From Octopus sinensis (lineage: Eukaryota), in NCBI RefSeq assembly GCF_006345805.1, contig NC_043012.1, forward strand, positions 45,942,001-46,006,000: 64,000 bases of DNA, read 5' to 3'. The translations under genes and the position numbers were made by a program. Shown here piece by piece: positions 1,600-54,560 of this stretch. Within the stretch, counting starts at the first letter, position 1, and every line of letters starts with the position of its first letter. The notes under the pieces were generated by a model, which searched no databases, was not told the DNA's origin, and saw only the letters and a list, made by a program, of their open reading frames with translations.

Positions 1600-2830
1600 G
1601 ATAACCGATCTGTTGTTAATGATGTAATTATTAATGAGAAGTGCGCAAAAAGAGATTATGACAGAAATGATGGGTAATCCAACCATTAATGGGATGAGAA
1701 CTAATATCAAAGCCATAAACATAGGAAAAGTTCCAAGTTTGGATGGGACACACGTTGAATTCATTCCCTTTGGAGGAAATAAAGTGGCTATGGCTATGCA
1801 TAGCCGAGTTTTTTCTGCATGGCATGTCAAGTCTGTCCGAAAGACTGGGTATGAATGCATGCTTTCCATTTTCATGGGAAGGTCTCGAATTCTGAATATG
1901 CTGACTGCCGTAATATAAGTCTACTGGAATCGATAGGAAAAGTTTTATGCAACATTTTGCTGAATTTCCTAACAAAATGGTTTCGCCATGGTGTGGATTT
2001 AGAGCTGGGTGGGGTACTCTCTTTTTCTTTCTTTTTACTCTTTTTACTTGTTTCAGTCATTTGACTGCGGCCATGCTGGAGCACCGCCTTTTAGTCGAGC
2101 AAATCGACCCCGGGACTTATTCTTTGTAAGCCCAGTACTTATTCTATCGGTCTCTTTTGCCGAACCGCTAAGTGACGGGGACGTAAACACACCAGCATCG
2201 GTTATCAAGCAATGCTAGGGGAACAAACACAGGCACACAAACATATTCACACACACTTATATATATATACATATATACGACAGGCTTCTTTCAGTTTCCG
2301 TCTACCAAATCCACTCACAAGGCATTGGTCGGCCCGGGGCTATAGCAGAAGACACTTGCCCAAGATGCCACGCAGTGGGACTGAACCCAGAACCATGTGG
2401 TTGGTTAGCAAGCTACTTACCAAACAGCCACTCCTGCGCCTATGATTTTCTGAACTCTCCAGATAATGTAGATATATGTTGAGCAACGAGAGCCTTCGAT
2501 GCTATTAATCATAATGCAATCATAGTAGGTCATTTTGGGGAATCTTAGATGACCTCATGAATTTATTGGAATATTCAAAAAGCTTCTTCAAATATGAGGG
2601 CGAAAGTGAACTCAAATGGGAAACTTTCAGGGCTAATTCTAGTGGAAAACGATATTAGACAAGGTGACATTTTCAACACCCACTCTGTTCTCCATATACA
2701 TTGCCGTGCTAATTATGTATGTCTTCGACGACTTCGAATTTGGTGTGCATATGCGAAGGAAAAGCTCTGGCAAAATATTTAATCAAAGACGCTTCAAACA
2801 TTTCGTATTCTTTTCAGACAATTGTTATTC
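1600..2830 (+). pseudogene. Decayed RTE-clade LINE reverse transcriptase fragment, split by a SINE insertion
   Basis: Frameshifted pieces GKVPSLDGTHVEFIPFGG..W, DCRNISLLESIGKVLCNILLN, and after the SINE ENDIRQGDIF/TPTLFSIY..GKIFNQRRF match RTE RT motifs (GKAPGxDG, NYRGISLL, GVKQGCVLAPTLF, GKLFNLRRL). Confidence 0.8.
2020..2441 (-). mobile_element. tRNA-derived SINE, family A (full length, well preserved)
   Basis: Complete head-to-tail copy with (TTTTACTC)-like tail; contains the uninterrupted GTTAGCAAGCTACTT site at 2404-2418. Confidence 0.93.
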
Positions 2831-8420: not shown

Positions 8421-10930
8421 GTTCTGAAACTTAGTGTGTGCTTGCGTATGTATTAATAGTCGTGTATGATAAATGCTATATAGTATACACATATAAGAGT
8501 GTCAAGGAGAGAGAAGGAGGAGTAGAATAAGTGGGGAGAGTAGAAGAAGAGCGTATTACATTTACGTGATTTTGTATTTTCGTTTCGTTGTTACTCAGCG
8601 AAAGGACAGAAGTTACTGGATGCTCCTTGAAAAACGGTAACATTGTAAGAGTGCAATTCTCGAAGCACTTTAATTCGACTGGTATATAAATATCAGATGG
8701 AGAGTCTAAAATTACTTAACAACTCTATTGTTTTTTTCACACAACAGTTTGTGTAATAGTTTATCACTTAGACAAAGGAGAGCAAGAATCAAAAACAATG
8801 ATATGCATAATCGGCAGAATTGAAAATGAATTTGTCAGTTACTGTTATATTTCGTCTTCGGGGATCAACTTGTTATTCACAATGCGTGCTCATAATGTAC
8901 TCAAATCATTGAAGTAAGGATGACGTCGAGATACATCCATGTTTCGACCTTGTATCGCAAAGTTACTGCTATTTCCCGATCGATGAAACTATAAACAAGA
9001 ACTATGTCACCTCTTTATAGAATTTAGCAAACAAAATTATATTTGTGATTCCTGCTGATGGCTGCCAAACGGACAAAAATACCCCATATGTACTGAAAAT
9101 CAAAGTAATGCCCTACAATAAAGAGTGCATTTGAATAATGGCATATATATATACCAAGGTATAACCAAACCACGAACATATTCCACTACAGGAGACAGGT
9201 TTCCAGGATGGTTCTCGAAAGTAATAGGATAGTATTGGTAACACTCAGGAGTGTGAATCTTGGAAACGATCAAAGAACGTTCATTGATTCCGATATAATT
9301 TTCATTGAAGAGGGGTTAAAAAAAGATATTGAAACAGAATGGCGTCTCAAAGTACCCCTCTCTTACCACACTGGTTCAAGTGGGTTGTGAACATACACTA
9401 TGACCAAAGAGGCGTTGTTCTCCAACAAATATATATGTGGATATAGATACATACATACATACATATATATATATATTTGTGTGTGTGTGTTTGTGTGTTT
9501 TCACGAGCGCGCGTTTGTGTGTGTGCTTATGTATGATATTGAAGTCAAACCAAATAAGCATATGTATATATACACTTGTATATGTACATATGTAGATAAA
9601 TATGCGCACGCATGTGTATGTGTGTGTGTGTGTATACATGTATTTATATGTATGTTTGCATACTTGTGTGTATACATAAAATTGATTATAAAGGTTTTGA
9701 TATTGTTTAATAGAGTAATTAAAACATATTTTGTTTGTATTCTATTCTTCAAATTGCAATTGATAATATTTTCCCAATAAAACTAATAGACTTATTTAGT
9801 TTAAAATTTCATTGTAATTAAACATGAAAAGCCAACTAATAATAGCATTTATTTTTTGGTGGAAAACACTAAAACGAAACCCATTGTAAAATAAGCTTTG
9901 TTTTGTGAATATAGTATTTGCTATTTAGAAATTACCTTCTTTAGTATCGTTAATTATGTCAAATTCTGAGCCTTTTCACTATCCCTTCGGTGCTATAATA
10001 TTTACAGAATACATTTAATGAAGACTCCTTCTAAAACTTTATAAACGCAAAATAGAAAATGTTCAGAAAATACAACATTTGGGGATAATAAAATAAAATT
10101 ATTTGCTCGTGTACTTGCTTATTATTAATTTAATTTATTTATTTACATTTTAATAATTGCTTTTTTTAGATGCCTAATCTCTGGAGAAGGTATAAAAATG
10201 TTTGGTGTTGATGTACAAACGTAAAACTAAATGGAATCGGATTATTATGTCGCTTTTGGCAAGCTGGACAATTTGGGTAGGAATCATCAGGGATAACTAA
10301 ATACAATAATGTGAGACTATCGTTAGAATGTGATTAACGATTGGCTTTAAAGCGGTCGTCTGATGTTCTTTATTGTAATGTAAACAAATGGTATAAAAGA
10401 GTGCATTTTAAAGCAATTGCCAACGGATTTGGTAATTATCTTCATATTTAATGTATTTTAAATTTTATAGTAAATCAGCTTTCATTTCATTTATTTAATG
10501 TCGCCTAGATTATTTTTTGCGGAAAATAATGAATCGTTATTGAGACAGTGCATTTAATTTATTCTATATTTTGAAATAAAAGCAGTATAGTATAAACTTT
10601 ACAAATACTTTACGTATTCATGACGAGCATCGTAGGATATTGTTGCTAATATATTCCATGAAATGGAGTGTCGAGTGCGTAAGGCTCATGGGTGAATTTT
10701 AATTTGCAAATTACAGTAATATTTCGGAATATCACATGTGAACGTAATCCACTCAGAATTATCTTATCTCCTATGTGTTGCTTTTTCAAAAGTTGTGCTT
10801 CATCTGCTTATATAAATCTGAATTAGAGGTGCGAATATCCAGGGGTTTGTTTTTTCATTAGTTTCTTTTTTTGTCTGTTTTCTTTCCTTTTACTAGAAGT
10901 CCGTGTGTTTTATATTGATCTGTCATTTAA

Positions 10931-14600: not shown

Positions 14601-15736
14601 CCATCATAGGAATAAAGAAAGACATAATTCATTATATTAAAAGTTAGTTTATCGGAAAATAAAGTATAATATTGACAAATTGATCTAATACAATTTGTGG
14701 ATAGCAAACGTTTTATTCAAATGTTTGATTGAATACTTTGAAGATTTTATAAAATGAATCGAAAAGAAGGGGTGTTTTTTTTATATTATAAGTGGTCGAA
14801 ATGAATTGACAGCGATATTCCAGTCTGTTTTTATAGAATTAGTATTATTTATTTCAAATTCATAAATTTTGCATAGTTTCTAATGTTGAGTTAAGAATAA
14901 ATGAGGTTTATCATTTTTTTTTTGAAGTTGTAGGCGAAATGTGAAACAGCGGAATAATTACATTACCTGAAAACTTTCTGCTGGGTGATGTAATAAATAA
15001 CAGGATATTCTCTTAATTTTTTTTGTGGTATTGCAATGTATGTGAATGAGCCAGATGTTTGCAACAGTCGTTGAACAATATATGTGAGGACTTAAATAAA
15101 CTATGTTGGGTGATGTCAGTAAAAAGAAGACAAAATGAAAATAGATATTGTAGAATCTTACGAAGATTAATTAACAACATTATAATATTTCGGGAAACGT
15201 ACTCGTTATCAAGTAGAAATTAACATTACGCATAGACGTTAGTGAAGCATGCTGTTGTAGTCAAGCAATTGGAATAAGTAAATACCTTTACTATTTATAC
15301 CATATTTCCTATAGGAATTCAATCTCCAAATATTTAGCTGCAAACACAGATGAGAACTATCAATTTGAAGCAAATAAATAACTCATGAATATTATAAATT
15401 ACTCTAATATATGCGTAGACATTAGTTGTTTCACCGACATCGCCATACTGGTGCCTTACTTTAGCTTAACTTCTGCTTTGAGATGCTTATTGCACCAAGG
15501 AGGGATTGTATATCATTATGCTTAGTAAAACCTGTAAATCGGTTTCTGTTTTAATTATCAGCAATCACTACGTTTGAATTAAAATTAAGCAAATCCAGAA
15601 CAAAACTTCAAAGTTGGTGTTTTACTTTACTTTTCATGATATGTAATGTAAAGAAAATTATATGATTTTGCATGGGAATTTCCCAAACTTTACAGGGTAA
15701 GTTCTTAATTTTAAAAAAATATTTTGCAATTAAATA

Positions 15737-16109
15737 TTTTTACTCTCTACTCTTTACTCTTTTACTCTTTTACTTGTTTCAGTGGCCATATTGGCCATAT
15801 TGTGGCCATATTGGAGCATCGCCTTTAGTTGAACACATAGACCCTAGGACTTATACTTTCCAAGCCTAGTACTTATTCTATCAGACTCTTTTCCCGAACC
15901 ACTAAGTTACGGGGGCGTAAACACACAGATTCGGTTGCCAAGTGGTGTTGGAGGGACAAACACAAACACACCAACATATACACACACATACATACATATA
16001 TCTCCTCACAAGGCTTTGGTTGGCCCGCGGTTATAGTAGAAGTCACTTGCCCAAGGTTCCACGCAGTGGGACTGAACCCAGAACCATGTAGTTCGTAAGC
16101 AAGCTACTT
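15737..16109 (-). mobile_element. SINE family A, body and tail (host of the two insertions)
   Basis: Colinear with 2020-2418 up to the target 15-mer at 16095-16109. Confidence 0.93.
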
Positions 16110-18435
16110 TATTTCATATCATTTGCCATAAAGGCAGTACATAGAGTAAGTTAGCTTTGCGGGCTGGACGAGGACATTAATGAAATGAATGATAATGAAA
16201 CAAAGATGATGGGGATGGGAGAAGACAAGAAGCGCCCGCCGACTTCTGCTTCTCTAAAACATTGTTCTTTTAAAAACAAACACAAAACGATGTATCAAAC
16301 CTCTTACAATTTTTACAAATTTTCAGTTTTTGGACTTAACAGTCCATTACTAATAACAACATAGTTCAATAATTACATATATAAATACAATACACAAAGC
16401 CCCTCCTCCCAGACCTGGCTTACACTTCCCTTAGGAATGCGCCAGCTCTAGGTCGGGGCCCCTCAAAGTGTATCACAATTTGACTCGTCCTCGAAATAAC
16501 TTGTGCCCGTATCCTCCACCATCCACCACGCCTCCCTCAGAATGTAATCGAGTTCCGAGTTAGCGTCGCCCGGGACCAAGCTATAATCCTCATTGAGCTC
16601 CTTCAGCCCAAGCGTCACGTCGAACTCCACGGCCTCCACAGCTACCTGTGGAGGCCATTCGGGGTCCTGTGTGAAGGCTAAAGGTGCTCCCTTGTGGTGC
16701 TTTTCCATCACCTTTTCGATCTCTCCGCCTCTATGGAAGAGGATCAATACCTCGTTTTTGCTCGGGTGCGGGATATTCAATTCTTTCGTTGGCGGCACAG
16801 TTCCCGCCAACGGTATTCCTTCTGTCGGTGGCACAATCCCAACCGACGTAGTTTCGGGACATTCCGGTGCTATGTCACCGACAGCCGGTAATGTCCCGTT
16901 TCTCTTCCTCTTTTTCTTTTTTTCTTTTCAGCTGAGGGAGGGTGCGTCTCCTCCGTGGCCGGAAGATTCGCCTTTCCCTCCTCATCCCTAGTATCCTTTG
17001 GTGAGCACCCATTGTTGCTGACCTTCCTCTTTCGGCCTCTGTTTGATGAGTCCTCCGCTTCCTCGGCCGTTTTCATTCCCTCTTCTACAGGGGTTTCACT
17101 TAACTGTTCCGGGATTCTATTTTGTTCCCGGGGACAGTTCTTCTTTATATGGCCGGACTCCAAGCACCGATGACAATTAGGAGGATACCTCAAGCATCAC
17201 CGGATACCTGCACCCGGCCATTTTCAAAAAATCTGGAAGAACCAGATTGGCTGATTGGGTCCAAAGGGTCAAAATTGCCTTTGACCCAACCCAAGCAGCC
17301 GCAGGTAGAACTTTCACATTAAGGAGCTTAGTTTCGCTGCTACCCAGACCCCGGCGGATAGTCTCCTCTATCCACTCGGGTTTTATCCCGGGTGGCAGCC
17401 CGCAAATCCAAGCTTTCGTGAGTCTATTTTTTTGGTACGTGGGCAGGAATAAAATTTCCTTACCCTCCAGGGGTTTACTAGCAAATTTGCAAGCCTCTTC
17501 AGGGGTGTCAAATAGCAACCACACCGTTGCATATTTGACACCCCTGGAAATGAATTTAATTGTTGGCAAATACTCTGCCAACTCCTTTTCAATTGCCGTC
17601 TTTTCGAATAGGGCGATGGTGTCGAGTGCCTTGGAGTAGGTTCTCAACACCACCGTCCTATCTTCACGGTCTTTTAACCACTTTTTAGGCGGTATGATCT
17701 CCCATTCCAAAATTTTGTATTTTTTCATTGCCATGTTTTTTTTTGTTTTTTTTAAATATATTCAAATTAAACTTAAAAAGCGAGAAGAAAAAAGTTCAAA
17801 AGTCCAAATAAAATTTGATAGATTTTTGGAAAAACAAAAAGGAGAAAGCACAACAGAAGGGAAGAAATCAACGGAAAGTCGCAATAAACAAAAAAAAAAA
17901 ACAAAAGGGGGAGTTAAATGAAGTTCAAAAGAAAGTTAATAAACAGAAAAAACACAGCAAAGATCTTCTGGCCTTACGGTACTCCCGGCCTGAGTTGAAC
18001 CTGGAACGCCGCAACTGGAACACAACCTCCACAAAAATGGGTCCGAAAGGTAATCCAAAAGTGGCTTATTCTTATAATTTTCTTGCGAAATACTCCGACA
18101 AAGGAATAAATTCAACAAACCCAAACACAGCACTGGCTACGGTAATTTTAACAGTAACTGTATTGGGTTCCGAGGATACGCCCCTCCACTGTTTTTTTTC
18201 TCCAATAAACACAAAAACAAAGTAGCCGCCGAGAGCAGGCGAAATTGTCTCAGAGTTGGACACAACTTACTGAAATAATAATTAGCACGCAATAAATTGT
18301 GCCCAACTCACAATAAACAAAATCACTCACCTCGACAACTTTCTGTTTTTGGTCTTTTTTCTATAATTGGACGGAGCTGGTTAACTCACGTCCACTCTGG
18401 CTCAACAGGAAGCAACTGACTAACTGCGCACGTGT
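16110..18435 (-). mobile_element. ORF1-only L1/Tx1-like non-autonomous retroposon, element 1 (2.3 kb)
   Basis: Bounded by GT(A/T)AGCAAGCTACTT repeats at 16095-16109 and 18436-18450; one gag-like ORF; 350-bp 3' UTR ending GTACTGCC..GGCAAAT..ATGAAATA; no EN or RT sequence. Confidence 0.8.
16463..17734 (-). pseudogene. ORF1 protein (RRM-like region, CCHC zinc knuckle, acidic/basic linker, WPPQV domain), two frameshifts
   Basis: ORFs 17177-17734, 16870-17193 and 16463-16834 join into about 420 codons; PPNCHRCLESGHIKKNCP is a Cx2Cx4Hx4C knuckle; frameshifts near 17185 and in the A-run near 16915. Confidence 0.8.
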
Positions 18436-18450
18436 GTTAGCAAGCTACTT

Positions 18451-20445
18451 TATTTCATTAAAATTTCCCACGAGGGCAGTACAAAGAGTAGCTGCGGGTT
18501 GGACAAAAACATTACAACAGCGAAAATTGTCTTACGATTCTTCTTGTCAGGTCCCCCGACCTAATTGACGTGCCGCCTGCAGGCAACTCTGCATCTACAG
18601 GTCGGGGCCTGAAAACAGAACAGCGAATTCTTTCTTGTCAAAGGTCGCTGTGACCTTTGACGAAGTTTTTTTCTGTAATAGCCTCCGCAGTCACCTGTGG
18701 AGGCCAATTCGGACAGCTTCTGTCGTACGAGTACATTCGTCCTAGTTCGCCCATGCTGTCCAGAAATTTGCTAAACTTTCCTCCCTCGCGATAAAGGAGG
18801 ACAACCGTTCCCTCTTCAGGAGAAGGTACTTCATGCTGCTCCGTCAGTGGCACACTTCCCACTGACGGAGCCCTCTCCGCAATTGGCACACATCCCACTT
18901 GCGGCTCCGTCTGCGACTCATGAACATCAGCCGCCCGACCTCTATTTCTTTTTCTCCTCCTTTTTTGGGGGGAGACTGCTGACCCAGGGGCTTCAGTCAG
19001 CAGACATGGGAGGTCGTTATCCCCCTCCGCCACCTGAGCATTCTTTGGCGAGCAACCATTGTTGCTCGCCTGTCTTTTTCTTTTCGTGGAGGCGATTTCC
19101 TCCACGACTTCCACCGTCTCCCCCTCCAATGAGGGGGCGGCGGGCACCTTTTCCTCTTCATGCTCCGGGGCACCACCACGGCCCCCGGGACAATTCCTCT
19201 TGATATGTCCGGGCTCCAGGCACAGGTGACACTTGGGAGGGGGGCGTCCCTCGAGTATCACCGGGTACCTGTGCCCGGCCATTCTCAGGAAGTCTGGGAA
19301 TCTCATCTCTTCCACGGCTACCGGGGTCCACAGGGTCAAGGTTGCCTTTGACCCCTCCCAGGCGACCGCGGGAGTCATTTTTATACTCAGTAGCCTGGGT
19401 CCGCTATCCCCCAGGCCTCGTCGGATGGTCTTCTCGATCCATCCCGCCTCCGTGCCCGGGGGCAGCCCACAAACCCAGGCTCTTTTTATTTTTCTGCCAC
19501 AATACGAGGGGAGGAGCAAAATTTCCTCTCCCTCCAGGGGCTCGCTAGCAAATCTGCTAGCTTCCTCGGGGGAACCAAACAGCAACCACACCGTTGCAAA
19601 TTTAGTCCCCCGAGAAATAAACTTTATAGTTGGCAGGTGGTCCACCAACTCTCTTTCTATTGTACTCCTGTCGAAGAGGGCGATGGCCCCACGCGACCTA
19701 GAATAGATTCGTAGGACCACCGTCCTCTTCTCAAGACTTTTAATCACTGCTTGGGTGGGACAACCTCCCACTCCAAAGCAGTGGTTTCATTTTTTTTTGC
19801 CATGTGAAAGAAGTTCAAAGTTCAAAATAAAATATGATAGATTGAAACAAAGTAGGGAAGGTACTCAAAGGAGAAGCACAACAGAAAGGAAGAAATTAAC
19901 AGAAAGTCACAATAAACAAAAAAAACAAAAAGAGAAGTTAAATAAAGTTCAAAATAAAGTCACAGCAAAAATCGTCTGGCCTTACGGTACTCCGGCCTGA
20001 GTTGAACCTGGAACGCCGCAACACAACCTCCACAAAAATTGGTCCAAAGGGTAATTCAAAAGTGGCTTGATACTCCGACAAAGGAATCAATTTTCCGGCC
20101 GAAAAGGTACTCCTGGCCGTCTAATGGTGGAATAAATTCCAACTGGAATTAATTTTTGAGGAGGGGCTACGCCTCCTCAAAAAACAATTCTCACTGCAAG
20201 GTGAGTCTTTATACCCGACAACAGGCAGGAAAAAATACCTGGAGCAAAGTGAAGTTTATTACCTGCTAAAAATTGTTAATGCTAACTAACATTAAATGTT
20301 AAAACCATTAAAAGCAAGCAATAAAATTCACTAAACTCTGAAAAATATACTAATTGCCTACATGTCGTCGAGTCAAAAGTTCAACATTTCACGTTAAAAC
20401 ACGTGACAACTGGAGTAGCAAAAAACACGTCCGACCACGTCAGAT
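18451..20445 (-). mobile_element. ORF1-only L1/Tx1-like non-autonomous retroposon, element 2 (2.0 kb)
   Basis: Bounded by identical GTTAGCAAGCTACTT at 18436-18450 and 20446-20460; same 3' terminus motif GTACTGCCCTCGTGGGAAAT..ATGAAATA; 5' UTR homologous to element 1; no EN or RT. Confidence 0.8.
18638..19803 (-). pseudogene. ORF1 protein of element 2 (377-aa open stretch; N-terminus disrupted)
   Basis: EGRPPPKCHLCLEPGHIKRNCP knuckle; about 63% identity to element 1 over 136 aligned residues (manual count); ATG at 19803 gives LEWEVVPPKQ* matching LEWEIIPPKKW, with TGG>TGA and a one-base loss in an A-run. Confidence 0.8.
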
Positions 20446-20478
20446 GTTAGCAAGCTACTTATCACACAGCCACTCCTA
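20446..20478 (-). mobile_element. SINE family A head (A box), displaced 4.3 kb from its body
   Basis: GTTAGCAAGCTACTTATCACACAGCCACTCCT matches 2404-2435. Confidence 0.9.
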
Positions 20479-21744
20479 CGGCTATTCTAAACAATTTGCT
20501 CGTGTGTATCGATTTAGGTGAAATATATACCAATTTTCGAGGTACAACATATGAGAATAATAACGATCAACCGCCCTCAAAATACTTTTGAAAATATGAT
20601 TTATTTATTTGTCTAAATAATCAGATTTGCTAGCATTTTATTTAAATTTGGACTGTACTACTTTCAAAAGACTATATTGCATAATTTGCTACTTAAATAG
20701 CAATACAAAAGCCAAAACGGTAAAACTACAAATATAGACTTGCATAGTGGGCAATCACTATGATGGCATGGATTTCAAAATTCATACGCAAAGTAATTAA
20801 AAGAATGTTATTAACTGATTTTAAATGAGAACTGGAAATATATTGTGAATCAATTTCTCAGACTAAGTCCGCAACAGCACTCACTCCATATGACTAACAT
20901 ATTCAAAGTATAACAGTCAGGATTAATGCAAAGGAATATGACTCCCAACAAGATCAAGGAATACTGCATTGGCATTCTAGAAAAATGTCCTCTAGGATTT
21001 GCATCTATATCTAACTTTTTCAGAAACTATTTCCGCTGCTGAGCATATCAGGTTCATACTGAAACATTTTATATTTCATAAGTGTAAGACTAAATCATAG
21101 ACATGCTGTAATAAACCGCCATTAATCGATAAATTTAAATATAATACGTCTATTTCATTCTAAAAATATATAAGGAGTGGTATAAAAGGCAATATAAGAA
21201 CAATATAAAACAATATAAACAACATAAGAACAATATAAAACAATATAAAAGTATAGTATAGAACAAGTATATAACATCTATCATACATATATGTTGAGAG
21301 AAAATTACCAGATTTATATTAGAAATTAGCAAAGAAGTTCAGTAATTTTTATTCGCAAGAGATAGACTTCGTTCTAATTTACTAACTTGCTCAAAATAAT
21401 TTAACTTAGTATTTAATAATTGATACAAATATCCAGTATTAACAAACACTAATTTACGTCATATGTAAACAAACATAAGTTTGATTTTGAAGCGTTGAAA
21501 TGTATTGCAGAAAAACGTAGAAAGCTACACGTAAATACTGAACAGTATATATAAAGGATAACATTCTTTTAAAAGCAGAAAAATTTGCCGGCAACCAGCT
21601 CTTAAAAGCATTTTAGTTGGAAAAATATATCTTTGTACTTGTTCTAAAACACTAATTGATTTTTATAATATATGAATACATATGCGATGCGCACGTCTGT
21701 ATATGTATATCTGTATACATATATCAAAAATGTCAAAATCTCTT

Positions 21745-30697: not shown

Positions 30698-32580
30698 CGA
30701 AGAAGGTTAAACGAGAACGTCGACTCAGAGATATTGCTTGGGCTGAATTCAAAAATCTGGATTCGACTGCAGCTTTTGAGGTGTACAAAACTCAACGAGA
30801 CCGAGCCGTGAAAATTGAAAAGAAAGAACGCTTCAGTTATGAATACAAAATCGCGGCAAATGCCAGTAGCAATCCAAAAACCTTCTTTGCCCATGTCCAG
30901 CGGAATTCCCGCTTGAACAACCAGATTGCAACGTTGGTAGACTCAACAGGCGTATCGATTGAGGACCCTTATCAACAGAGTCAATTATTTGCCGAGGCTT
31001 TTTCAACTATTTTCAAACAAGATGATGGTCGTGAACCCCCTCCATTTGATAGATCGGTACCTCCAATGCTTCGATTGATCATCACGCGGGACGAAGTCAA
31101 ACGTGTTATTCAAGGCCTCGATGTCAACAAGGGTCACGGCCCTGACGGCATACACCCACGGGTTATCAAAGCGTTGGCTGCGGTCATCTGCGAGCCCTTA
31201 ACACGACTATTCAATATGTCATTGGCGACGGGTGTTATACCTGCAGACTGGAGAACAGCGATAATCTGCCCAATTTTCAGGAAAGGGAGCCGCGAAGACC
31301 CGCTTAACTACCGACCGGTTTCCCTTACATCAATAATCAGCAAGATGTTCGAAACCATCATTAAGAAACGTATGATGCTCCACTTCCTAAACACAGCCTC
31401 GATCACTGATTCCCAACACGGCTTCGTGCCGAAGAGATCATGCTTGACCAACTTACTAGTAATGGAAGAATTGGTGACGCGCATCCTCGATGATAGTGAT
31501 GCTGTTGACATCGTTTTATTGGACTTTGCCAAAGCTTTTGACTCGGTAAACCACCGCCTACTACTTGTCAAGCTTCAAGCATATATTTTCCATCCGGATA
31601 TTGTACGATGGGTTGGTGCCTTCCTCTCAGATCGCTCCTTCCAAGTTCAAGTTAATGGTTCGCGGTCCGACGTCTCCAGTGCGAGCAGTGGCGTGCCTCA
31701 AGGTTCAGTGCTTGGGCCCTTGTTGTTCTTAGTCTTCATAAATGACTTGCCCGACGACCTCACGCAACACACGCTTCTATTTGCCGACGATATCAAACTG
31801 GTCGCTCCTCGCGGTAGTATAGAGGATCTTCGTCGATGCCTCCACCAAATTTGGAAGTGGTCTAACGATTGGGACCTGTGTCTGAACGTGTCAAAGTGCT
31901 GTCATCTGCCTGTCGGCTCTACTCCTACAACTCAACTTGATTTCGAGCCGGGTTGTCTGCTGCTGGAGAGGACCGATCAGGTAAAGGACCTGGGTATCTT
32001 GGTGGATTCCTCCTTTTCGCCTTCGGCCCAGTGCGTCCATGCTGCCAACAAAGCGCGCGGAATTCTGTTTTTGATTCGACGGTCATTCGGAATGCTCACA
32101 GCAGCCATATTCCTGCCACTCTATGTCACGCTGGTGAGACCCATATTGGAGTATGGGATTCAAGCCTCTTCTCCTTATCTCCTCAAAGACATACAGCATC
32201 TCGAAAGAGTCCAGAGGCTGGCTACCTGCATGGTTCATGGTCTCAAAAATTTGTCCTACGAAGAAAGGCTGAGGACGCTCGACCTTTATTCTCTTGAAAA
32301 ACGCCGCCGCCGTGGTGATCTCATTCTCGCCCACAACATCATAAGCGGGAAGTGTAACCTCTCGAAAGAGCTGTTCTTCACTCCTGCTCCGGAGCGTCGG
32401 CTGCGGGGTCATTCCGAAAAGCTCTACCTGCGACGATTTCATCTCAATCGAAGGAGAGGAGCTTTCTCCGTCCGGGTTGCGGATCCGTGGAACAAGCTGC
32501 CAGACGAGATGGTGAAGATGCCGACGACCGCTTTGTTCAAAGCCTCCCTGGACCTCAAGTGGCCTGAACTCTTTACATGA
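30694..32580 (+). CDS. CR1 ORF2 reverse transcriptase domain, 628 aa uninterrupted
   Basis: GPDGIHP, NYRPVSLTS, QHGF..RSCLTNL, DFAKAFDSV, GVPQGSVLGPLLF, FADD, KDLGI, RPILEY, LERVQR, RRRGDLI. Confidence 0.95.
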   Translation: MTKKVKRERRLRDIAWAEFKNLDSTAAFEVYKTQRDRAVKIEKKERFSYEYKIAANASSNPKTFFAHVQRNSRLNNQIATLVDSTGVSIEDPYQQSQLFAEAFSTIFKQDDGREPPPFDRSVPPMLRLIITRDEVKRVIQGLDVNKGHGPDGIHPRVIKALAAVICEPLTRLFNMSLATGVIPADWRTAIICPIFRKGSREDPLNYRPVSLTSIISKMFETIIKKRMMLHFLNTASITDSQHGFVPKRSCLTNLLVMEELVTRILDDSDAVDIVLLDFAKAFDSVNHRLLLVKLQAYIFHPDIVRWVGAFLSDRSFQVQVNGSRSDVSSASSGVPQGSVLGPLLFLVFINDLPDDLTQHTLLFADDIKLVAPRGSIEDLRRCLHQIWKWSNDWDLCLNVSKCCHLPVGSTPTTQLDFEPGCLLLERTDQVKDLGILVDSSFSPSAQCVHAANKARGILFLIRRSFGMLTAAIFLPLYVTLVRPILEYGIQASSPYLLKDIQHLERVQRLATCMVHGLKNLSYEERLRTLDLYSLEKRRRRGDLILAHNIISGKCNLSKELFFTPAPERRLRGHSEKLYLRRFHLNRRRGAFSVRVADPWNKLPDEMVKMPTTALFKASLDLKWPELFT

Positions 32581-34755: not shown

Positions 34756-35090
34756 ACTAGCATTAAAGACCCGTCGTTGCCGGGTCATAGTGCTAGTGCA
34801 TGTATATATGTGTACGTATTACATGTACATCTATATATATACATCTACACATAAAATACAAATTACAAAGTTATATCTTGATATTGCTAGTGATAACAAT
34901 ACTCAAAATATATAACAGACTGGAATTGTTAGCCCGTCTCTTGTAATTTCGATCAATTGTATCTTGTCCTCCCTCTTGTATAGAAGTGTGGCTACAATCC
35001 AGCCTACCTCTACTTTAGGGGGGTAAAATTTTTTCCGGGACGTCTTACGTCCCAGATATAAAGGTAAGAGTAAAATATTTCCACTTTGCA
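34756..35090 (+). mobile_element. Possible non-autonomous Helitron/Helentron-like fragment
   Basis: ACTAGC..GACCCG..GCCGGG start inserted in TA-rich DNA, similar start at 55500; family assignment from recalled motifs only. Confidence 0.35.
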
Positions 35091-35329
35091 AGTTCGATTA
35101 CTCCCTTGCACGCTCCGTTGACTTGAACCTTGCTCCTATTGTGGCGAATTTACCGCCTCTATTTAGATACCTTTCATAGTTGCACCAAGACACTTTTCGA
35201 AGGTGCTTTCCTCCATGTGTTCAAATCTTCTTTTTTCTCTACATTGTATACTTTATAGACAATAGTCTTTTCTTTAATTTAATTTTTTATTATCCATCTG
35301 GACTATTCTATTTCTGCACGCTAATTTTA

Positions 35330-35578
35330 TTGTGAAGGCTGGACAGGCTCCTCAATCAGCAGATCTCACCTGGGCTGATGACGGGTTAAGACCCAGAATA
35401 ATGCATATCCTCAGGCGTGAATCCTGGCTGGTGGAGGTGCTTACCTCTCCTTCACAAACATAAGGACACAGGGAAAAAATGTGTCAAAGCCGACAGGAAG
35501 CGGTCGATGCTTCCTAGGGCTAAACAGCGGTGGGGTAATTCCCATACGGGACTGTCACATTAAGTTGACGGTATACAA

Positions 35579-35582
<4 letters not shown>
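35330..35582 (+). ncRNA. Type I hammerhead (35369-35415) plus structured RNA domain (copy B)
   Basis: CCTGGG CTGATGA C GGGT-taag-ACCC A GAA TA-atgca-TA TC CTCAGG (one A short in GAAA); hairpins GAGGT/ACCTC, TCCTT/AAGGA, GACACA/TGTGTC, AGCC..AGGAAGC/GCTTCCT..GGCT. Confidence 0.65.
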
Positions 35583-35621
<39 letters not shown>

Positions 35622-35636
35622 TATATATATATATAT

Positions 35637-35665
35637 ATAATCATTATGTATCTATATTTGTATGC

Positions 35666-35698
<33 letters not shown>

Positions 35699-35722
35699 AA
35701 TCATTATGTATCTATATTTGTA

Positions 35723-35760
<38 letters not shown>

Positions 35761-42055: not shown

Positions 42056-42331
42056 CCCGGCGGAATTTGAACTCAGAACGTAACGGCAGACGAAATACCT
42101 ATTTCTTTATTGCCCACAAGGGGCTAAACATAGAGGGGACAAACAAGGACAGACAAACGGATTAAGTCGATTATATCGACCCCAGTGCATAACTGGTACT
42201 TATTTAATCCACTCCGAAAGGATGAAAGGCAAAGTCGACCACGGCGGAATTTGAACTCAAAACGTAACGGCAGACGAAATACGGCTACGCATTTCGCCCG
42301 GCGTACTAATGTTTCTGCCAGCTCGCCGCCT
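42056..42331 (-). mobile_element. tRNA-derived SINE, family B, with a partial tandem copy at its 3' end
   Basis: Head GGCGGCGAGCTGGCAGAAAC, body GAGTTCAAATTCCGCC; CGGCGGAATTTGAACTCA(G/A)AACGTAACGGCAGACGAAATAC occurs twice (about 42058 and 42242). Confidence 0.85.
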
Positions 42332-44109
42332 TAAACGGAATCAATATATTATAAGATGTATAACTGTTATAGAAATCAAGAATAAATTCTAATGAGAGAA
42401 GATATGTAAATGTGTAAAAATAATTTCAAAAGCTTATCTAATGCAGTTAAATTTTTTGTGGGGCACAAAGGCATTGAGAGGGGATATCCTTTCTATAGAT
42501 ACATAAGTATGCAAGCATTAAAAACCTATATATAAGTTTAAATCATTTTAATGCATTCTCCATAAATTTTGCATTCTAATCTATAATTTACATTTATTTG
42601 CAGTACATATATTTAAATATACAGAACATAATGCAGATAAATATTTTATCAATTCTAAATGTAATAAAGGACAGGAATGAATATTGAATTATAGGCTAAC
42701 GGAAACTGAGCCTCCAGTTACCTCTTTATCGCTTTTCCAAGCTACTTAGGGAAGCCAAAAGTTAAAAAGTGTAACTACGTGAAAATTTTCTCTTTTTAAT
42801 ACACAAACCGCAAAAATAATTGATGACCCTGTTCTTCTGTTTACAGTTATCTGAGAGGGTGTACGTACATAAAACAATTATTTCATTCCTTTGTATTCAA
42901 GCAACAGTCAAATTGAACAAAAATTATATGAAATTAACTCTTAAGGTTTTGAGATTAAGTTCATCTGAGAATCATAAAGACTGATTGTTTTTGTAAATCA
43001 TTCTCTACATAACCCCAAGCTTAATAATTTAAAATCATGCCAGGATAACCCTGGCTTTGATTTCTTGAAACAATATTTCTAATATCCATGTACTTAATTA
43101 AATATACCAAGTGACCTTCCTCTACTTTATCCAACCCTCTGAAAAATTTCAAATGAGAAATATTCAGCTTTCTCTATGCCAAACTACAAGTAATATATTT
43201 AAATTCACAATATGGATCAAAGGAATCATTTCATTTTGATGATTAAACTTAAGTTGTTTTAAATGAAACAAGTAGAAAAGCAAAGTTTTTAAAACTTCCA
43301 GTGCAATATGCAGTCATTTTGTGTCAATATTTTGAGCCTACTCAACAAAGCGTCTATTGGAATCGCAGAAAATATTCGAACACCGGCAGCTAATTTCTGT
43401 CTAGAATTAAAATTCATACAAATACTACTAAGAACACAAGTATACTATATGACAAAATGGGAAAATTTTCAAAAATATGCAAGTTTGAGGAACAGAATGA
43501 AAGATGCAATGAGTATGGTGCACAGGTGTTGCTCCAACATTTAATGTCTTTACTATATGCGTCGGGCGCGTTGATAAGCAAGTACTAATAAAGCATGCAA
43601 CAACAACGAGATTATTTCGAATTATCAACTACATCTCCTTTAAATTACAACCCATCATCTTTTAAACATCTAATACAATGTGCTAAATATCGAAACAAGT
43701 CTAATATTTACGGGTATAACACGTATATTTGTCACAAAGCAGTCATAAAATTTGGCTTAAGAATTTTAGTCACAAAAGTTTGCGTATCAGCAGCAGTAGC
43801 CGCAAATGTTAGCAAAAACCACCTTACATAAACGGAAAGAATGAAGCAGCTATAAGTTAATTTCACTCTGATCAATGTAAACGTCCACTTCTCATAACAA
43901 ATCGTCGAAATAAACGTACTTGCATTAACTATTAAATACGCCTTGCTGTTAGTTGTTAAATAGAAATCACTTCTCAGATGAATAGTGCCGATATGTTGAA
44001 TGAAGACCCCACGATATATGATAAACACACATGCCTGTATTATTCATATATGACATACTTAATTATAGTATATACATATAAACATTAAATGTGTGTGTAT
44101 GTGCGCGTG

Positions 44110-52639: not shown

Positions 52640-54560
52640 TTGTAAATACGCATTCATGCAAAAACCAAACCAGTCAATCCCACTCCATGGCACCCATTTG
52701 ACAACATAAACTTCCACAAAGCGGACTGGGGAGCAATCAGAAAGGATCTGTCTTCCATCGACTGGTCTTTTACTCTCCGTTCCTCTCATATTGAGACCGC
52801 GCGGCAGCACTTTGAAAACATTGTCACCTATACATGCTCTAAACACGCTCCCACGAAATCTACTAACACAAACAGAAACCGGCTCCCTAAAAAGAAAAAA
52901 ACACTCATCAGGTGCATTAAAAGACTCAACAAAAAAATCAACCAATTAAAATATTCCCACACACAACATCCACATTCAACAACAATGAAAAGACTAGAGC
53001 TGGAAAAACTTCATCTGCAGACCAACATGAACACCTTCATTGAAAATCAAAGACCAGTGTTCTATTCTTATGCAAATAAGCATAGAACCACTGTCTAACC
53101 CATTGGGCCATTGATTGATGATAACGGCTTTCTCCAACACGATGCGAAAGAAATGGCAGAACTACTGCAGAAACAATACTGCTCTGTCTTTAGTGTTCCC
53201 ACTGATATTGACGTAAGAGAAACGAACGAAGTTGACTCCCAACACAAAATCTCAGACATAATCTTCACTGCCACTGACATCGTAGCAGCAATAAATGAGG
53301 TAAAATATTACTCTGCTGTAGGCCCTGATAGATTCCCCACTATTCTTCTGAAGGAATGTAGACACCAACTTGCAGTCCCTCTGACCAACCTCTGGAGAAA
53401 TTCGTTAGACGCAGGTTATATACCGAAACAGTTTCTATCCGAGTCGGTCATCCAGGTTTTGAAACACGGAAACAGATCCCTCGCAACAACTATCGCCCAA
53501 TCTCTCTCACCTCCCACATCATTAAAGTGTTTGAAAGAGTGTTAAGATCAAGGATAGCTGACTTCCTGGAGACCCACAAACTCCTAAATGCAAATCAGCA
53601 TGGCTTTCGCTGTGGCAGGGATTGTCTAACACAGCTCTTACACCACATTGAAGATGTACTCAAAGCCTTGGGAACAGGTTCGAACTCTGACGTCATATAT
53701 CTTGACTTCAGTAAAGCGTTCGACAGGGTAGACCATAATATCTTACTCTCAAAATTGAGAGACCTGGGTGTAATTGTTGATGACGATCTCAGTTAGAGTG
53801 CACACATCAACAAGAAGGTCGATATAGCTCGTAGGATGAGTTCCTGGATCTTAAGAACTTTCCGGTCCAGAGAACAAGGTGTCATCATACCACTTTTTTC
53901 CTCCTTTGTACGGCCACACCTTGAATACTGCTGCCCACTGTGGTCTCCCCATACAAGACAAAACATCTCCAGAATTGAGTCACCCCAGAGGGCACTCACT
54001 AAACGAATTGAAGGCATGGCTGCTCTCGATTATTGGGATCGCCTTAAAGCCTTGAAACTTTACTCCCTCCAGCGTCGCCGTGAGCGGTACATCATTTGTA
54101 CGATGTGGAAAATATACCGCCAACTTTGCCCAAACGACCTAAACATTAGCTTCAAGGTTCATCCAAGACTTGGACCACGGGCTATACGTCCCCTGCCCAA
54201 TTCAAGATCACAACATACATGTACACTGCAACATAATTTATTTTCCTCAACAGGCCCTGCCCTATTTAACATTGTCCCGAGGGAGATCAAAGAGGAAAAG
54301 GATCCCATCAACTTTAAACGGAGTCTGGATAGATTCCTTCAAAGAATACCAGATAAGCCACCCATAATTGGATACAACTCACCCAACAAGAACTCACTAC
54401 TTTAACAAAACTTGATACAACTCACCCAACAAGAACTCACTACTTGAACAAAACTTGACTTAAACAAAACTTGACCTAAACAGGATTCGAAAATAATCCT
54501 ATCAGGTGGTGCTATTAAGTTAGACATGGCCTGGACCAGTTTATCTAAGTTTATATCACG
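52640..54560 (+). pseudogene. CR1-clade LINE ORF2 remnant with the RT catalytic core deleted
   Basis: AVGPDRFP..LLKEC, QHGFRCGRDCLTQLL, YLDFSKAFDRVDH, then directly DLGVIVDDDLS, RPHLEYC, LYSLQRRRERY; 43-bp tandem duplication at 54371/54414 near the 3' end. Confidence 0.9.

What the first reader, a model, noticed from the sequence alone, without database searches (positions are those of the whole stretch)
15737..20478. ORF1-only retroposon family that appears to target one fixed site in a SINE head; two different members stacked in tandem
Seen: one family-A SINE is split at the 15-mer GTTAGCAAGCTACTT, which is intact once in the copy at 2404-2418. The 15-mer occurs three times (16095 with one mismatch, 18436, 20446) and brackets two inserts of 2326 and 1995 bp, both in the SINE's orientation. 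Each insert has a 5' UTR, one gag-like ORF with a CCHC knuckle and a short 3' UTR. Both end ..ATGAAATA flush against the target with no poly(A), and neither has room for EN or RT. The two ORFs are only about 63% identical, mostly by conservative changes, so they are separate subfamilies and not a tandem duplication. Established: Tx1-clade L1 relatives are often sequence-specific (U2 snRNA, 5S rRNA, tRNA arrays, microsatellites), and ORF1-only half-L1 (HAL1) elements exist. Inference: a HAL1-like, target-specific family borrows a Tx1 ORF2 in trans and uses a very high-copy SINE as a renewable safe harbour, regenerating the target so that arrays can grow. I know of no description of this combination but cannot search the literature.
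Basis: partly seen in the sequence, partly recalled or inferred. Interest (0 to 1): 0.88.

Follow-up and report, generated by a model that had tools for sequence, protein, structure and literature searches.

The report
ORF1-only retroposons targeting a SINE head
Two diverged, ORF2-less relatives of octopus L1/Tx1-type LINEs sit in tandem at exactly the same 15-bp site in the head of one octopus SINE, and a third relative occupies the same SINE site in Octopus sinensis, so this is a real sequence-specific retroposon lineage, a new variant of known target-specific LINE biology.

Summary
The elements lie on the minus strand. One octopus SINE copy is split at AAGTAGCTTGCTAAC. That 15-mer flanks and separates two inserts of 1995 bp (B) and 2326 bp (A). 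Each insert is fully accounted for by a 5' UTR, one ORF1 and a 3' UTR ending ATGAAATA. Neither has a poly(A) tail or any ORF2 remnant.

New evidence:
- A third subfamily copy in O. sinensis has its 5' junction at the same SINE position.
- ORF1p is predicted to have two RRM-like folds plus a CCHC knuckle.
- Its distant relatives are cephalopod ORF1s. Four of the seven loci I fetched carry an adjacent APE, or APE-RT, ORF2 (L1 group). They show microsatellite targets, a 15-16 bp TSD and a tandem array.
- A and B share a small covarying 3' hairpin with those LINEs and with a SINE family.
- A second ORF1-only lineage, at (TA)n, has two deeply diverged copies.

Not shown: copy number, an autonomous partner at the SINE site, formal Tx1 placement, and current activity (all three ORF1s are broken).

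Verdict: a real, sequence-specific, probably trans-mobilised half-LINE lineage. It is a new variant of known kinds (Tx1-into-transposon targeting, HAL1, HeT-A). Interest is moderate.

The parts
20446..20485 (-). 5' part of the host SINE head (SINE positions about 3-42), ending in the first copy of the 15-bp target AAGTAGCTTGCTAAC (20460-20446)
   Evidence: BLAST with the intact SINE copy; pattern search; sequence
18451..20445 (-). Element B, 1995 bp. 5' UTR 20445-19804. ORF1 19803-18638, with ATG at 19803 and a 1-nt deletion near 19745. 3' UTR 18637-18451, ending ATGAAATA.
18466..18478 (-). B 3'-terminal hairpin, TGCC-CTCGT-GGGA in the common register (CCC/GGG stem)
18436..18450 (-). Second copy of the 15-bp target (AAGTAGCTTGCTAAC), lying between B and A
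16110..18435 (-). Element A, 2326 bp. 5' UTR 18435-17735. ORF1 17734-16463 in three frames (frameshifts near 17185 and 16900). 3' UTR 16462-16110, ending ATGAAATA.
16124..16136 (-). A 3'-terminal hairpin TGCC-TTTAT-GGCA
16095..16109 (-). Third copy of the target (AAGTAGCTTGCTTAC, one mismatch), continuous with the SINE body
15737..16094 (-). Remainder of the host SINE (B box GGTTCAGTCCC, body, GTAAAAGA-type repeat tail)
17886..18064 (-). A 5' UTR block that is 90-96% identical to B 19912-20065, although ORF1 is only 60-78% identical
19912..20065 (-). B counterpart of the highly conserved 5' UTR block
2095..2445 (-). Unoccupied copy of the same SINE subfamily, with the intact target at 2418-2404. 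It serves as the empty-site reference.

Best explanation
A and B are two diverged members of an octopod lineage of non-LTR retroposons derived from L1-group (most likely L1-Tx1) LINEs. They keep the 5' UTR, a Type I ORF1 (two RRM-like folds, a CCHC knuckle and a C-terminal domain) and the clade's 3' UTR with its small terminal hairpin. They lack ORF2 entirely.

**Shown**
- They integrate at one fixed position in the head of one octopus SINE subfamily, between the A-box-like and B-box-like motifs.
- They integrate in the SINE's orientation, with a 15-bp target-site duplication and no poly(A).
- Because the duplication reproduces the whole 15-mer, an occupied site offers the same 15-mer twice.

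**Inferred**
- A second, different member later integrated into one of the two duplicates, giving the head-to-tail pair.
- Mobilisation is in trans. An APE-RT ORF2 protein of an autonomous relative recognises the shared 3' hairpin tail, as it presumably does for the SINE family that carries the same tail.
- Its endonuclease nicks the bottom strand at 5'-..AGCTACTT^A-3' (SINE positions 27/28). Target-primed reverse transcription follows, and the top strand is cut 15 bp downstream.
- The partner's endonuclease would supply the site specificity.

All three known copies have broken ORF1s, so the lineage looks old and low-copy rather than currently active.
For: **Site specificity**
- Three 5' junctions (A, B, L001) and two 3' junctions fall at identical SINE coordinates and in the same orientation.
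- The 15-mer gives 4 hits against 0.15 expected.

**LINE origin**
- The AlphaFold model of the ORF1 protein has mean pLDDT 78, and above 90 over most of residues 11-130. Its best Foldseek matches are tandem-RRM proteins (NONO/SFPQ, hnRNP A1 UP1) at probability 1.0 but low TM-score, and it is followed by a CCHC knuckle.
- The profile search finds 96 distant relatives. Seven of the ten checked for a source name were cephalopod; the other three carried no name.
- In L003, L004 and L005 the ORF1 is followed by an APE-RT-zf-RVT ORF2. In L006 it is followed by the start of an APE. The best solved match is human L1 ORF2p, E 2e-71.

**Clade habits**
- (ATT)n on both flanks of L003, and (TA)n on both flanks of L002.
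- A 15-16 bp TSD in L005.
- An array of three units, 99.1-99.6% identical, in L004.

**Shared 3' module**
- A 4-bp hairpin followed by an A-rich tract occurs in A, B, L002-L005, a window SINE (42.1 kb) and an Argonauta repeat.
- 93.8% of cells pair against 69% in shuffles. Three of four pairs change on both sides. The covariation score is 0.598 against 0.147, reached by 0 of 500 shuffles.

**ORF2-less architecture**
- All bases of A and B are accounted for, with no ORF2 remnant.
- The post-ORF1 blocks are collinear, and both 3' UTRs begin with a GGCCCCGACCT...AGGTCKGGG hairpin.
- L002 and L007 are two copies of another ORF1-only lineage. Their ORF1s are 47% identical in amino acids, neither has an ORF2, and both abut (TA)n.

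**Selection on ORF1**
- dN/dS is 0.15-0.21 in the N-terminal domain and 0.29-0.40 downstream.
Against: - Only three copies are known, and one is 3'-truncated, so amplification of an ORF2-less master is not demonstrated.
- No autonomous element of this ORF1 lineage, and none at this SINE site, was found. Three protein searches returned only P0001.
- Purifying selection on ORF1 could have acted in autonomous ancestors rather than in ORF1-only elements.
- The Tx1-versus-L1 assignment is indirect.
- In the common register, B's hairpin has one non-pairing position.
- All ORF1s are disrupted.
- I could not search any whole octopus genome.
Confidence: 0.6

Rival explanations
1. The lineage is an ordinary autonomous, SINE-head-specific L1-Tx1 family. 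A and B (and L002, L007) would be individual internal-deletion copies that lost ORF2 during or after integration, and never propagated as ORF1-only elements.
For: - Internal deletions are common in LINE copies.
- Only two informative copies exist.
- dN/dS below 1 is equally expected if ORF1 evolved inside autonomous masters.
- Four of the seven fetched relative loci have an adjacent ORF2.
Against: - A and B are 31% diverged, yet both lack ORF2 cleanly, from a few nt after the ORF1 stop to the start of a 3' UTR of normal length. They share collinear blocks and leave no ORF2 remnant.
- The same holds for L002 and L007, at 47% ORF1 amino-acid identity.
- No ORF2-linked ORF1 of this lineage appears among about 15 billion predicted proteins, although ORF1s of the autonomous relatives do.
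Confidence: 0.25
2. The site specificity is contributed by the element itself rather than by the partner endonuclease. ORF1p or the RNA would guide a non-specific or differently specific ORF2p to the SINE head, for example through read-through RNA pairing with the target or through ORF1p binding. This would resemble the way HeT-A Gag targets telomeres.
For: - No autonomous element with this target was found.
- The known autonomous relatives have other targets.
- The ORF1 lineage is very divergent, at 20-29% identity to all others, and is conserved within itself.
Against: - In APE-type target-specific LINEs the endonuclease is regarded as the main determinant of target choice (stated in PMC4494074).
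- Failing to find a partner in protein databases is weak evidence, because repeats are masked before gene calling.
- There is no obvious complementarity between the element's 3' end (GAAAUA) and the primer end (..CTACTT-3').
Confidence: 0.1
3. The tandem pair is not the product of two sequential integrations. It would be an assembly join, or an ectopic recombination between two separately occupied SINE copies at the shared 15-mer or SINE sequence.
For: - The three 15-mers give a short homology.
- A 180-nt 5' UTR block is 90-96% identical between A and B, which shows some sequence exchange between them.
Against: - 15 bp is too short to mislead a modern assembler.
- The junctions are exact, with intact element ends on both sides.
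- Recombination between two occupied SINEs would still require two site-specific insertions.
- Tandem arrays occur in the relative L004, and the literature reports tandem Utopia insertions in U2 genes (PMC4640811) and SINEU-3 copies flanked by other SINEU or Tx1 copies at the Mariner target (PMC4494074).
Confidence: 0.04

Closest known systems
Tx1L in Tx1D (Xenopus), and Tx1-Mar with SINEU in Mariner-N4_AMi (crocodilians; Kojima 2015, PMC4494074)
   Same: These are L1-group, APE-type LINE lineages that insert at fixed sites inside another transposon family. Non-autonomous passengers (SINEU) share the same target and are inferred to use the LINE machinery. Copies are often found flanked by other copies at the target.
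   Different: - The target here is the tRNA-like head of a SINE, not a DNA or LTR transposon.
- The passenger is a 2-kb protein-coding ORF1-only element, not an snRNA-headed SINE.
- No autonomous element with this target has been seen.
- Tx1 clade membership was not tested by RT phylogeny.
HAL1 (half-L1) of mammals
   Same: It is derived from an L1-group LINE, keeps only ORF1 plus UTRs, and is presumed to use ORF2p in trans (my own knowledge; the name appears in the papers listed).
   Different: HAL1 has the Type II (coiled-coil/Transposase_22) ORF1 and an A-rich tail, and shows no sequence-specific target. The octopus elements have a Type I ORF1 (RRM-like folds plus CCHC), a hairpin tail without poly(A), and a fixed target.
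HeT-A of Drosophila telomeres
   Same: It is a Gag-only non-LTR element with RT supplied in trans. It has a restricted target and forms head-to-tail arrays (my own knowledge; I saw only the title and abstract of PMC5537684, which describe HeT-A as a telomere-targeted non-LTR element).
   Different: HeT-A belongs to the Jockey clade. It adds to chromosome ends rather than to an internal DNA sequence, makes no TSD, and has a host function in telomere maintenance.
Kibi/Koshi-type microsatellite-specific Tx1 elements (named in PMC4494074)
   Same: The window element's relatives L002, L003 and L007, and the fragment at 35 kb, are flanked by (TA)n, (ATT)n or (GA)n.
   Different: A and B target a unique 15-mer in a SINE, not a simple repeat.

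Membership tests
L1-group (L1/Tx1) non-LTR retrotransposon | ORF2 with an APE endonuclease, a reverse transcriptase and a C-terminal zinc-binding (zf-RVT/CCHC) domain | tested here: not met
   ORF2 is absent from A and B. It is present next to related ORF1s in L003, L004 and L005: Pfam Exo_endo_phos, RVT_1 and zf-RVT, with human L1 ORF2p at E 2e-71. A and B can therefore only be non-autonomous derivatives.
L1-group (L1/Tx1) non-LTR retrotransposon | Type I ORF1p: at least one RRM plus a CCHC knuckle (definition quoted in PMC5203782) | tested here: met
   The AF2 model shows two beta-alpha-beta RRM-like folds. Its Foldseek top hits are tandem-RRM proteins at probability 1.0. The CX2CX4HX4C knuckle is conserved in the alignment, although Pfam zf-CCHC scores 18 bits, just below its cut-off.
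Tx1 clade specifically | RT phylogeny grouping with Tx1L/Keno/Kibi rather than with L1 proper | not testable with these tools
   No Tx1 reference sequences were available. The indirect support is that O. vulgaris repeat annotation lists L1-Tx1 as its only L1-group class (PMC13282606), and that Type I ORF1 variants in animals are described as consistent with Tx1 (PMC5203782).
Target-specific non-LTR retrotransposon | Independent copies at the same nucleotide position of a repeated target, in one orientation | tested here: met
   Three 5' junctions and two 3' junctions fall at the same SINE coordinates, in two SINE copies from different loci. The sample is small.
HAL1-like ORF1-only non-autonomous family | Only ORF1 between the UTRs, with no ORF2 remnant | tested here: met
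   Every base of A and B is assigned to a part, and there are no tblastn or local-alignment signals of ORF2.
HAL1-like ORF1-only non-autonomous family | Many copies sharing the same ORF2-less structure, which would show amplification of an ORF2-less master | tested here: inconclusive
   A and B share collinear post-ORF1 blocks. The third copy is truncated before that point. The analogous lineage L002/L007 has two ORF2-less copies. Genome-wide counts were not possible.
HAL1-like ORF1-only non-autonomous family | An autonomous partner sharing the 3' end | tested here: inconclusive
   The 3' hairpin module is shared with autonomous relatives and with a SINE, and it covaries. No partner with the ...ATGAAATA end or the SINE target was found.
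tRNA-derived SINE (the host) | A tRNA-like head with A and B boxes, a body and a LINE-type tail | tested here: inconclusive
   A-box-like TGGCTGTTTGG and B-box-like GGTTCAGTCCC motifs can be read directly in the sequence. ARAGORN finds no tRNA anywhere in the window, and Rfam (run on 15700-20600 only) finds no tRNA in the split SINE copy. About six copies lie in the window.

The most novel reading that the evidence does not exclude
Octopods would harbour long-lived, protein-coding 'half-LINE' lineages that have dispensed with ORF2 at least twice: one specific for a SINE head, one for (TA)n. These lineages would persist as parasites of autonomous L1-Tx1 elements through a shared 3' hairpin while keeping ORF1 under purifying selection. 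The SINE-head lineage would then be the first sequence-specific ORF1-only LINE derivative. It would imply efficient trans-action of ORF2p on ORF1p-coated foreign RNAs, and possibly a contribution of ORF1p or the RNA to target choice.
Probability: 0.35. Interest if true: 0.7.

Novelty: new variant of a known kind. Interest (0 to 1): 0.5.

Why it matters
- **Safe-harbour targeting.** It would add a SINE head to the list of safe-harbour targets of sequence-specific LINEs. With SINEs at about 11.6% of the O. vulgaris genome (PMC13282606), that is a very large and renewable harbour.
- **ORF1-only elements.** It would show that ORF1-only derivatives can keep strict target specificity.
- **cis-preference.** These elements offer a natural system for asking how much LINE cis-preference depends on ORF1p, and whether target choice lies only in the endonuclease.
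- **Annotation.** The 3' hairpin motif links an octopus SINE family, autonomous LINEs and the half-LINEs to one mobilisation machinery. That is useful for annotating the repeat-rich cephalopod genomes.

Tried and rejected
- **Protein word-index searches.** Three searches (the B ORF, the full alignment, and the N-domain alignment) each returned only P0001. No further family members could be fetched.
- **Junction scan.** An exact scan of metagenome contigs for the 3' junction found nothing.
- **Exact-product look-ups.** The look-up of A's first ORF piece, and of P0002 and P0035, found no record.
- **Pfam on ORF1.** It gave only a sub-threshold zf-CCHC hit. The RRM folds needed structure prediction.
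- **RNA families.** Rfam and ARAGORN gave nothing meaningful in the region; a mir-306 hit at 29.6 bits falls well below its gathering score of 52.
- **ORF2 remnant in A's tail.** I tested whether A's extra ORF1 C-terminal tail is a remnant of the ORF2 C-terminus. Alignment scores were no better than shuffles, so I rejected this.
- **Pol III drive from the SINE A box.** Rejected, because B starts with a T6 run about 20 nt in.
- **Head as part of the element.** I considered that the SINE head might be part of the element's own 5' end. Rejected, because A is preceded only by the 15-mer.
- **Tandem duplication.** Rejected at 31% divergence.

Full report
**1. Observation**

The 15-mer GTTAGCAAGCTACTT occurs at 2404, 18436 and 20446, and with one mismatch at 16095. 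Chance expects 0.15 hits, and none of 100 shuffles reached four.

The sequence reads most naturally on the minus strand. In order it holds:
- a SINE head ending ...GGAGTGGCTGTGTGAT
- AAGTAGCTTGCTAAC
- a 1995-bp insert (B, 20445-18451)
- the same 15-mer
- a 2326-bp insert (A, 18435-16110)
- AAGTAGCTTGCTTAC
- the rest of the SINE, down to about 15737.

BLAST with the unoccupied SINE copy at 2095-2445 matches SINE positions 3-42 upstream of B and positions 28-349 downstream of A. Positions 28-42 are therefore duplicated, as a 15-bp target-site duplication. Other SINE copies in the window differ at this site, so the target is a subfamily variant. No other copy of A or B lies in the window.

**2. 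Anatomy of the inserts**

Both inserts have the same orientation as the SINE.

| Part | A | B |
|---|---|---|
| 5' UTR | 701 nt | 642 nt |
| ORF1 | 1272 nt | 1166 nt |
| 3' UTR | 353 nt | 187 nt |

- Both end ATGAAATA with no poly(A). Nothing is left over for an ORF2.
- tblastn with ORF2 proteins of related elements finds nothing in either insert.
- A's extra ORF1 tail does not resemble an ORF2 C-terminus.
- Both ORF1s are damaged. B has a 1-nt deletion at about codon 20. A has two frameshifts.
- A and B are 68.8% identical over 969 nt. ORF1 is 59% identical in amino acids in the N-terminal domain.
- They share only short collinear blocks after ORF1: TGGCCTCCACAGGT, GGCCCCGACCT, TACTCTNTGTACTGCC and ATGAAATA.
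- Both 3' UTRs begin with a GC-rich long hairpin built on GGCCCCGACCT...AGGTCKGGG.

**3. A third copy at the same site**

The only close protein relative in 5.8 billion clusters is P0001, O. sinensis LOC115225585 (confirmed). At its locus L001, the element's 5' end abuts a different copy of the SINE head at the same position and in the same orientation...GGCTGTGTGGTAAGTAGCTTGCTTCC|TGTGCATGCGTTGATTAGTTGCTTCC. This is homologous to A's 5' end, ACACGTGCGCAGTTAGTCAGTTGCTTCC. The copy is truncated inside the ORF1 C-terminal region, so it says nothing about ORF2.

P0001 is 74% identical to A and 57% to B. Three subfamilies therefore share one target.

SINEs make up about 11.6% of an octopus genome (PMC13282606), and this SINE is about 350 bp long. 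Three random insertions would coincide in position and orientation with a probability of roughly 1e-7 or less. This is my own rough estimate.

In the loci at hand, four other SINE copies with a near-consensus target are empty.

**4. What ORF1 is**

- Pfam sees only a sub-threshold zinc knuckle.
- An exhaustive profile search finds 96 distant relatives. Seven of the ten checked for a source name are from Octopus or Argonauta; the other three carry no name.
- Their alignment shows an RGxxYGTVxVxF-type motif, a second domain, VEGRxPxCxxCGxxGHxxxxC, and a C-terminal motif.
- The AlphaFold model has mean pLDDT 78, and above 90 across most of residues 11-130. It has two RRM-like folds. Foldseek's best PDB matches are tandem-RRM proteins (NONO/SFPQ, hnRNP A1 UP1, IMP3 RRM12) at probability 1.0. 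TM-scores are low because the relative domain orientation differs.
- This is the Type I ORF1p architecture, which PMC5203782 associates with plant L1 and animal Tx1-like elements.
- dN/dS among A, B and P0001 is 0.15-0.21 in the N-terminal domain and 0.29-0.40 downstream.

**5. Relatives and their habits**

| Locus | Source | Structure | Flanks or target |
|---|---|---|---|
| L003 | O. sinensis | ORF1, then APE, a degraded RT and zf-RVT | (ATT)n on both sides |
| L004 | O. vulgaris | Array of three full-length units, 99.1-99.6% identical, one with an intact 1132-aa ORF2 | Junction heptamers |
| L005 | Argonauta hians | ORF1 + ORF2 | 15-16 bp TSD, TCTTCAACTTATGTTT |
| L006 | Logan contig | ORF1, then the start of an APE | Contig ends |
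| L002 | O. vulgaris | ORF1 only | (TA)n on both sides |
| L007 | O. vulgaris | ORF1 only | (TA)n on the 5' side |

- The L004 ORF2 has Exo_endo_phos, RVT_1 and zf-RVT domains. Its best solved relative is human L1 ORF2p, E 2e-71.
- L002 and L007 belong to one lineage. ORF1 is 47% identical in amino acids, and a 3' UTR block is 80.6% identical over 103 nt. Neither has an ORF2. A truncated member of this lineage lies in the window at about 35.6-34.9 kb, next to (TA)n(GA)n.
- ORF1-only elements are therefore recurrent in this clade, and at least one such lineage has persisted through deep divergence.
- The A/B/P0001 ORF1 lineage is about equally distant (20-29% identity) from all the others.

**6. 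A shared 3' module**

The following all end with CTCTNTGT.., a 4-bp GC-rich stem, a CTTGT-like loop and an A-rich tract:
- A and B
- L002, L003, L004 and L005
- a tRNA-derived SINE of another family in the window (42340-42100, minus strand)
- an Argonauta repeat (L005, about 9100).

On eight sequences, 93.8% of cells pair against 69% in shuffles. Three of the four pairs change on both sides. The covariation score is 0.598 against 0.147, reached by 0 of 500 shuffles. Sliding the partners by one to three columns destroys the signal.

The 42-kb SINE tail is nearly identical to the L004 3' end. I infer that this machinery mobilises non-autonomous RNAs through this tail.

**7. Mechanism**

*Shown:* fixed target, orientation, 15-bp TSD, intact 5' and 3' ends, absence of ORF2, the shared hairpin tail, and relatives with APE-RT.

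*Inferred:*
- An ORF2 protein supplied in trans by an autonomous L1-Tx1-type relative binds the hairpin tail.
- Its endonuclease nicks the bottom strand after ..CTACTT (SINE positions 27/28).
- Reverse transcription is primed there, and the top strand is cut 15 bp downstream.
- The TSD regenerates the 15-mer on both sides, so a second member could integrate into one duplicate, giving B-A. Which element came first cannot be told, because one mismatch in the third 15-mer fits either order.
- The endonuclease is usually taken to determine target choice (PMC4494074). This model therefore predicts an autonomous element at the same SINE site, and I could not look for one.

**8. Rivals**

- *Independent internal deletions of an autonomous SINE-specific family.* This remains plausible (0.25). 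It is disfavoured by the clean, collinear ORF2-less architecture of both A and B, by the same architecture in L002 and L007, and by the absence of any ORF2-linked ORF1 of this lineage in the protein collections.
- *Targeting by ORF1p or the RNA (HeT-A-like).* This is speculative (0.1).
- *Assembly or recombination artefact.* This is unlikely (0.04).

**9. Comparison with known systems**

- Tx1-clade insertion into other transposons is published: Tx1L into Tx1D, Tx1-Mar into Mariner-N4_AMi, and other families into Harbinger and LTR elements. So are non-autonomous SINEU elements that share the target and lie next to other copies there (PMC4494074).
- Target lists for non-LTR elements include tRNA genes, transposons and microsatellites (PMC4640811).
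- HAL1 (ORF1-only L1) and HeT-A (Gag-only, targeted, arrayed) supply the other halves of the analogy; these rest on my own knowledge.
- My full-text searches did not turn up a LINE lineage targeting a SINE head, nor an ORF1-only member of the Tx1 group. Repbase could not be consulted.

I therefore rate this a new variant of a known kind. It is real and tidy, and of moderate interest.

**10. Unexplained**

A 5' UTR block of about 180 nt is 90-96% identical between A and B, although their ORFs are 60-78% identical and A is otherwise closer to P0001. Possible explanations are gene conversion between the neighbouring elements, or a recombinant origin.

Noticed in passing
window 34935-35760 (- strand): A 3'-truncated element (5' UTR plus part of an ORF1 of the same superfamily) abuts a (TA)n(GA)n microsatellite. 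Its 5' UTR is 75-80% identical to that of L007, so it belongs to the (TA)n-associated ORF1-only lineage L002/L007.
   Followed up: partly
window 42100-42340 (- strand): A tRNA-derived SINE of a different family has a 3' tail (TTGTCCCCTCTATGTTTAGCCCCTTGTGGGCAATAAAGAAAT) that nearly matches the 3' end of the autonomous LINE in L004. It is followed directly by a 5'-truncated copy of the same SINE. This suggests that the LINE clade mobilises this SINE family.
   Followed up: partly
window 17886-18064 and 19912-20065: A 5' UTR block is 90-96% identical between A and B, although the ORFs are 60-78% identical and the L001 copy is divergent in that block. Gene conversion between neighbours or a recombinant origin could explain it. 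It remains unexplained.
   Followed up: partly
L002 9560-11780 and L007 5300-7800 (O. vulgaris): Two copies of a second ORF1-only lineage: (TA)n lies on both flanks of L002 and on the 5' flank of L007. ORF1 is 47% identical in amino acids, they share a 3' UTR block, and neither has an ORF2. L007's 5' UTR carries inverted repeats of about 100 bp, with one arm repeated near the 3' end.
   Followed up: partly
L004 4445-19184 (O. vulgaris OX597840.1): A head-to-tail array of three L1-group elements of 5.3 kb, 99.1-99.6% identical (the third is cut short at 19184). One has an intact 1132-aa ORF2. The junctions carry similar heptamers (CCGACAG, TGATAAG, CCGATAG).
   Followed up: partly
L005 9790-15260 (Argonauta hians): A full-length ORF1+ORF2 element with a 15-16 bp TSD (TCTTCAACTTATGTTT). 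A separate repeat ending in the same 3' hairpin motif lies at about 9100-9125.
   Followed up: no
L003 9725-15380 (O. sinensis): A degraded ORF1+APE+RT element flanked on both sides by (ATT)n. Its 5' end, AACGTGGATGGACGTGT, resembles B's 5' end, GACGTGGTCGGACGTGT.
   Followed up: no
window 30886-31803 (+) and 53485-53772 (+): Reverse-transcriptase fragments, only about 25-33% identical to the L004/L005 ORF2. They belong to other LINE clades.
   Followed up: no
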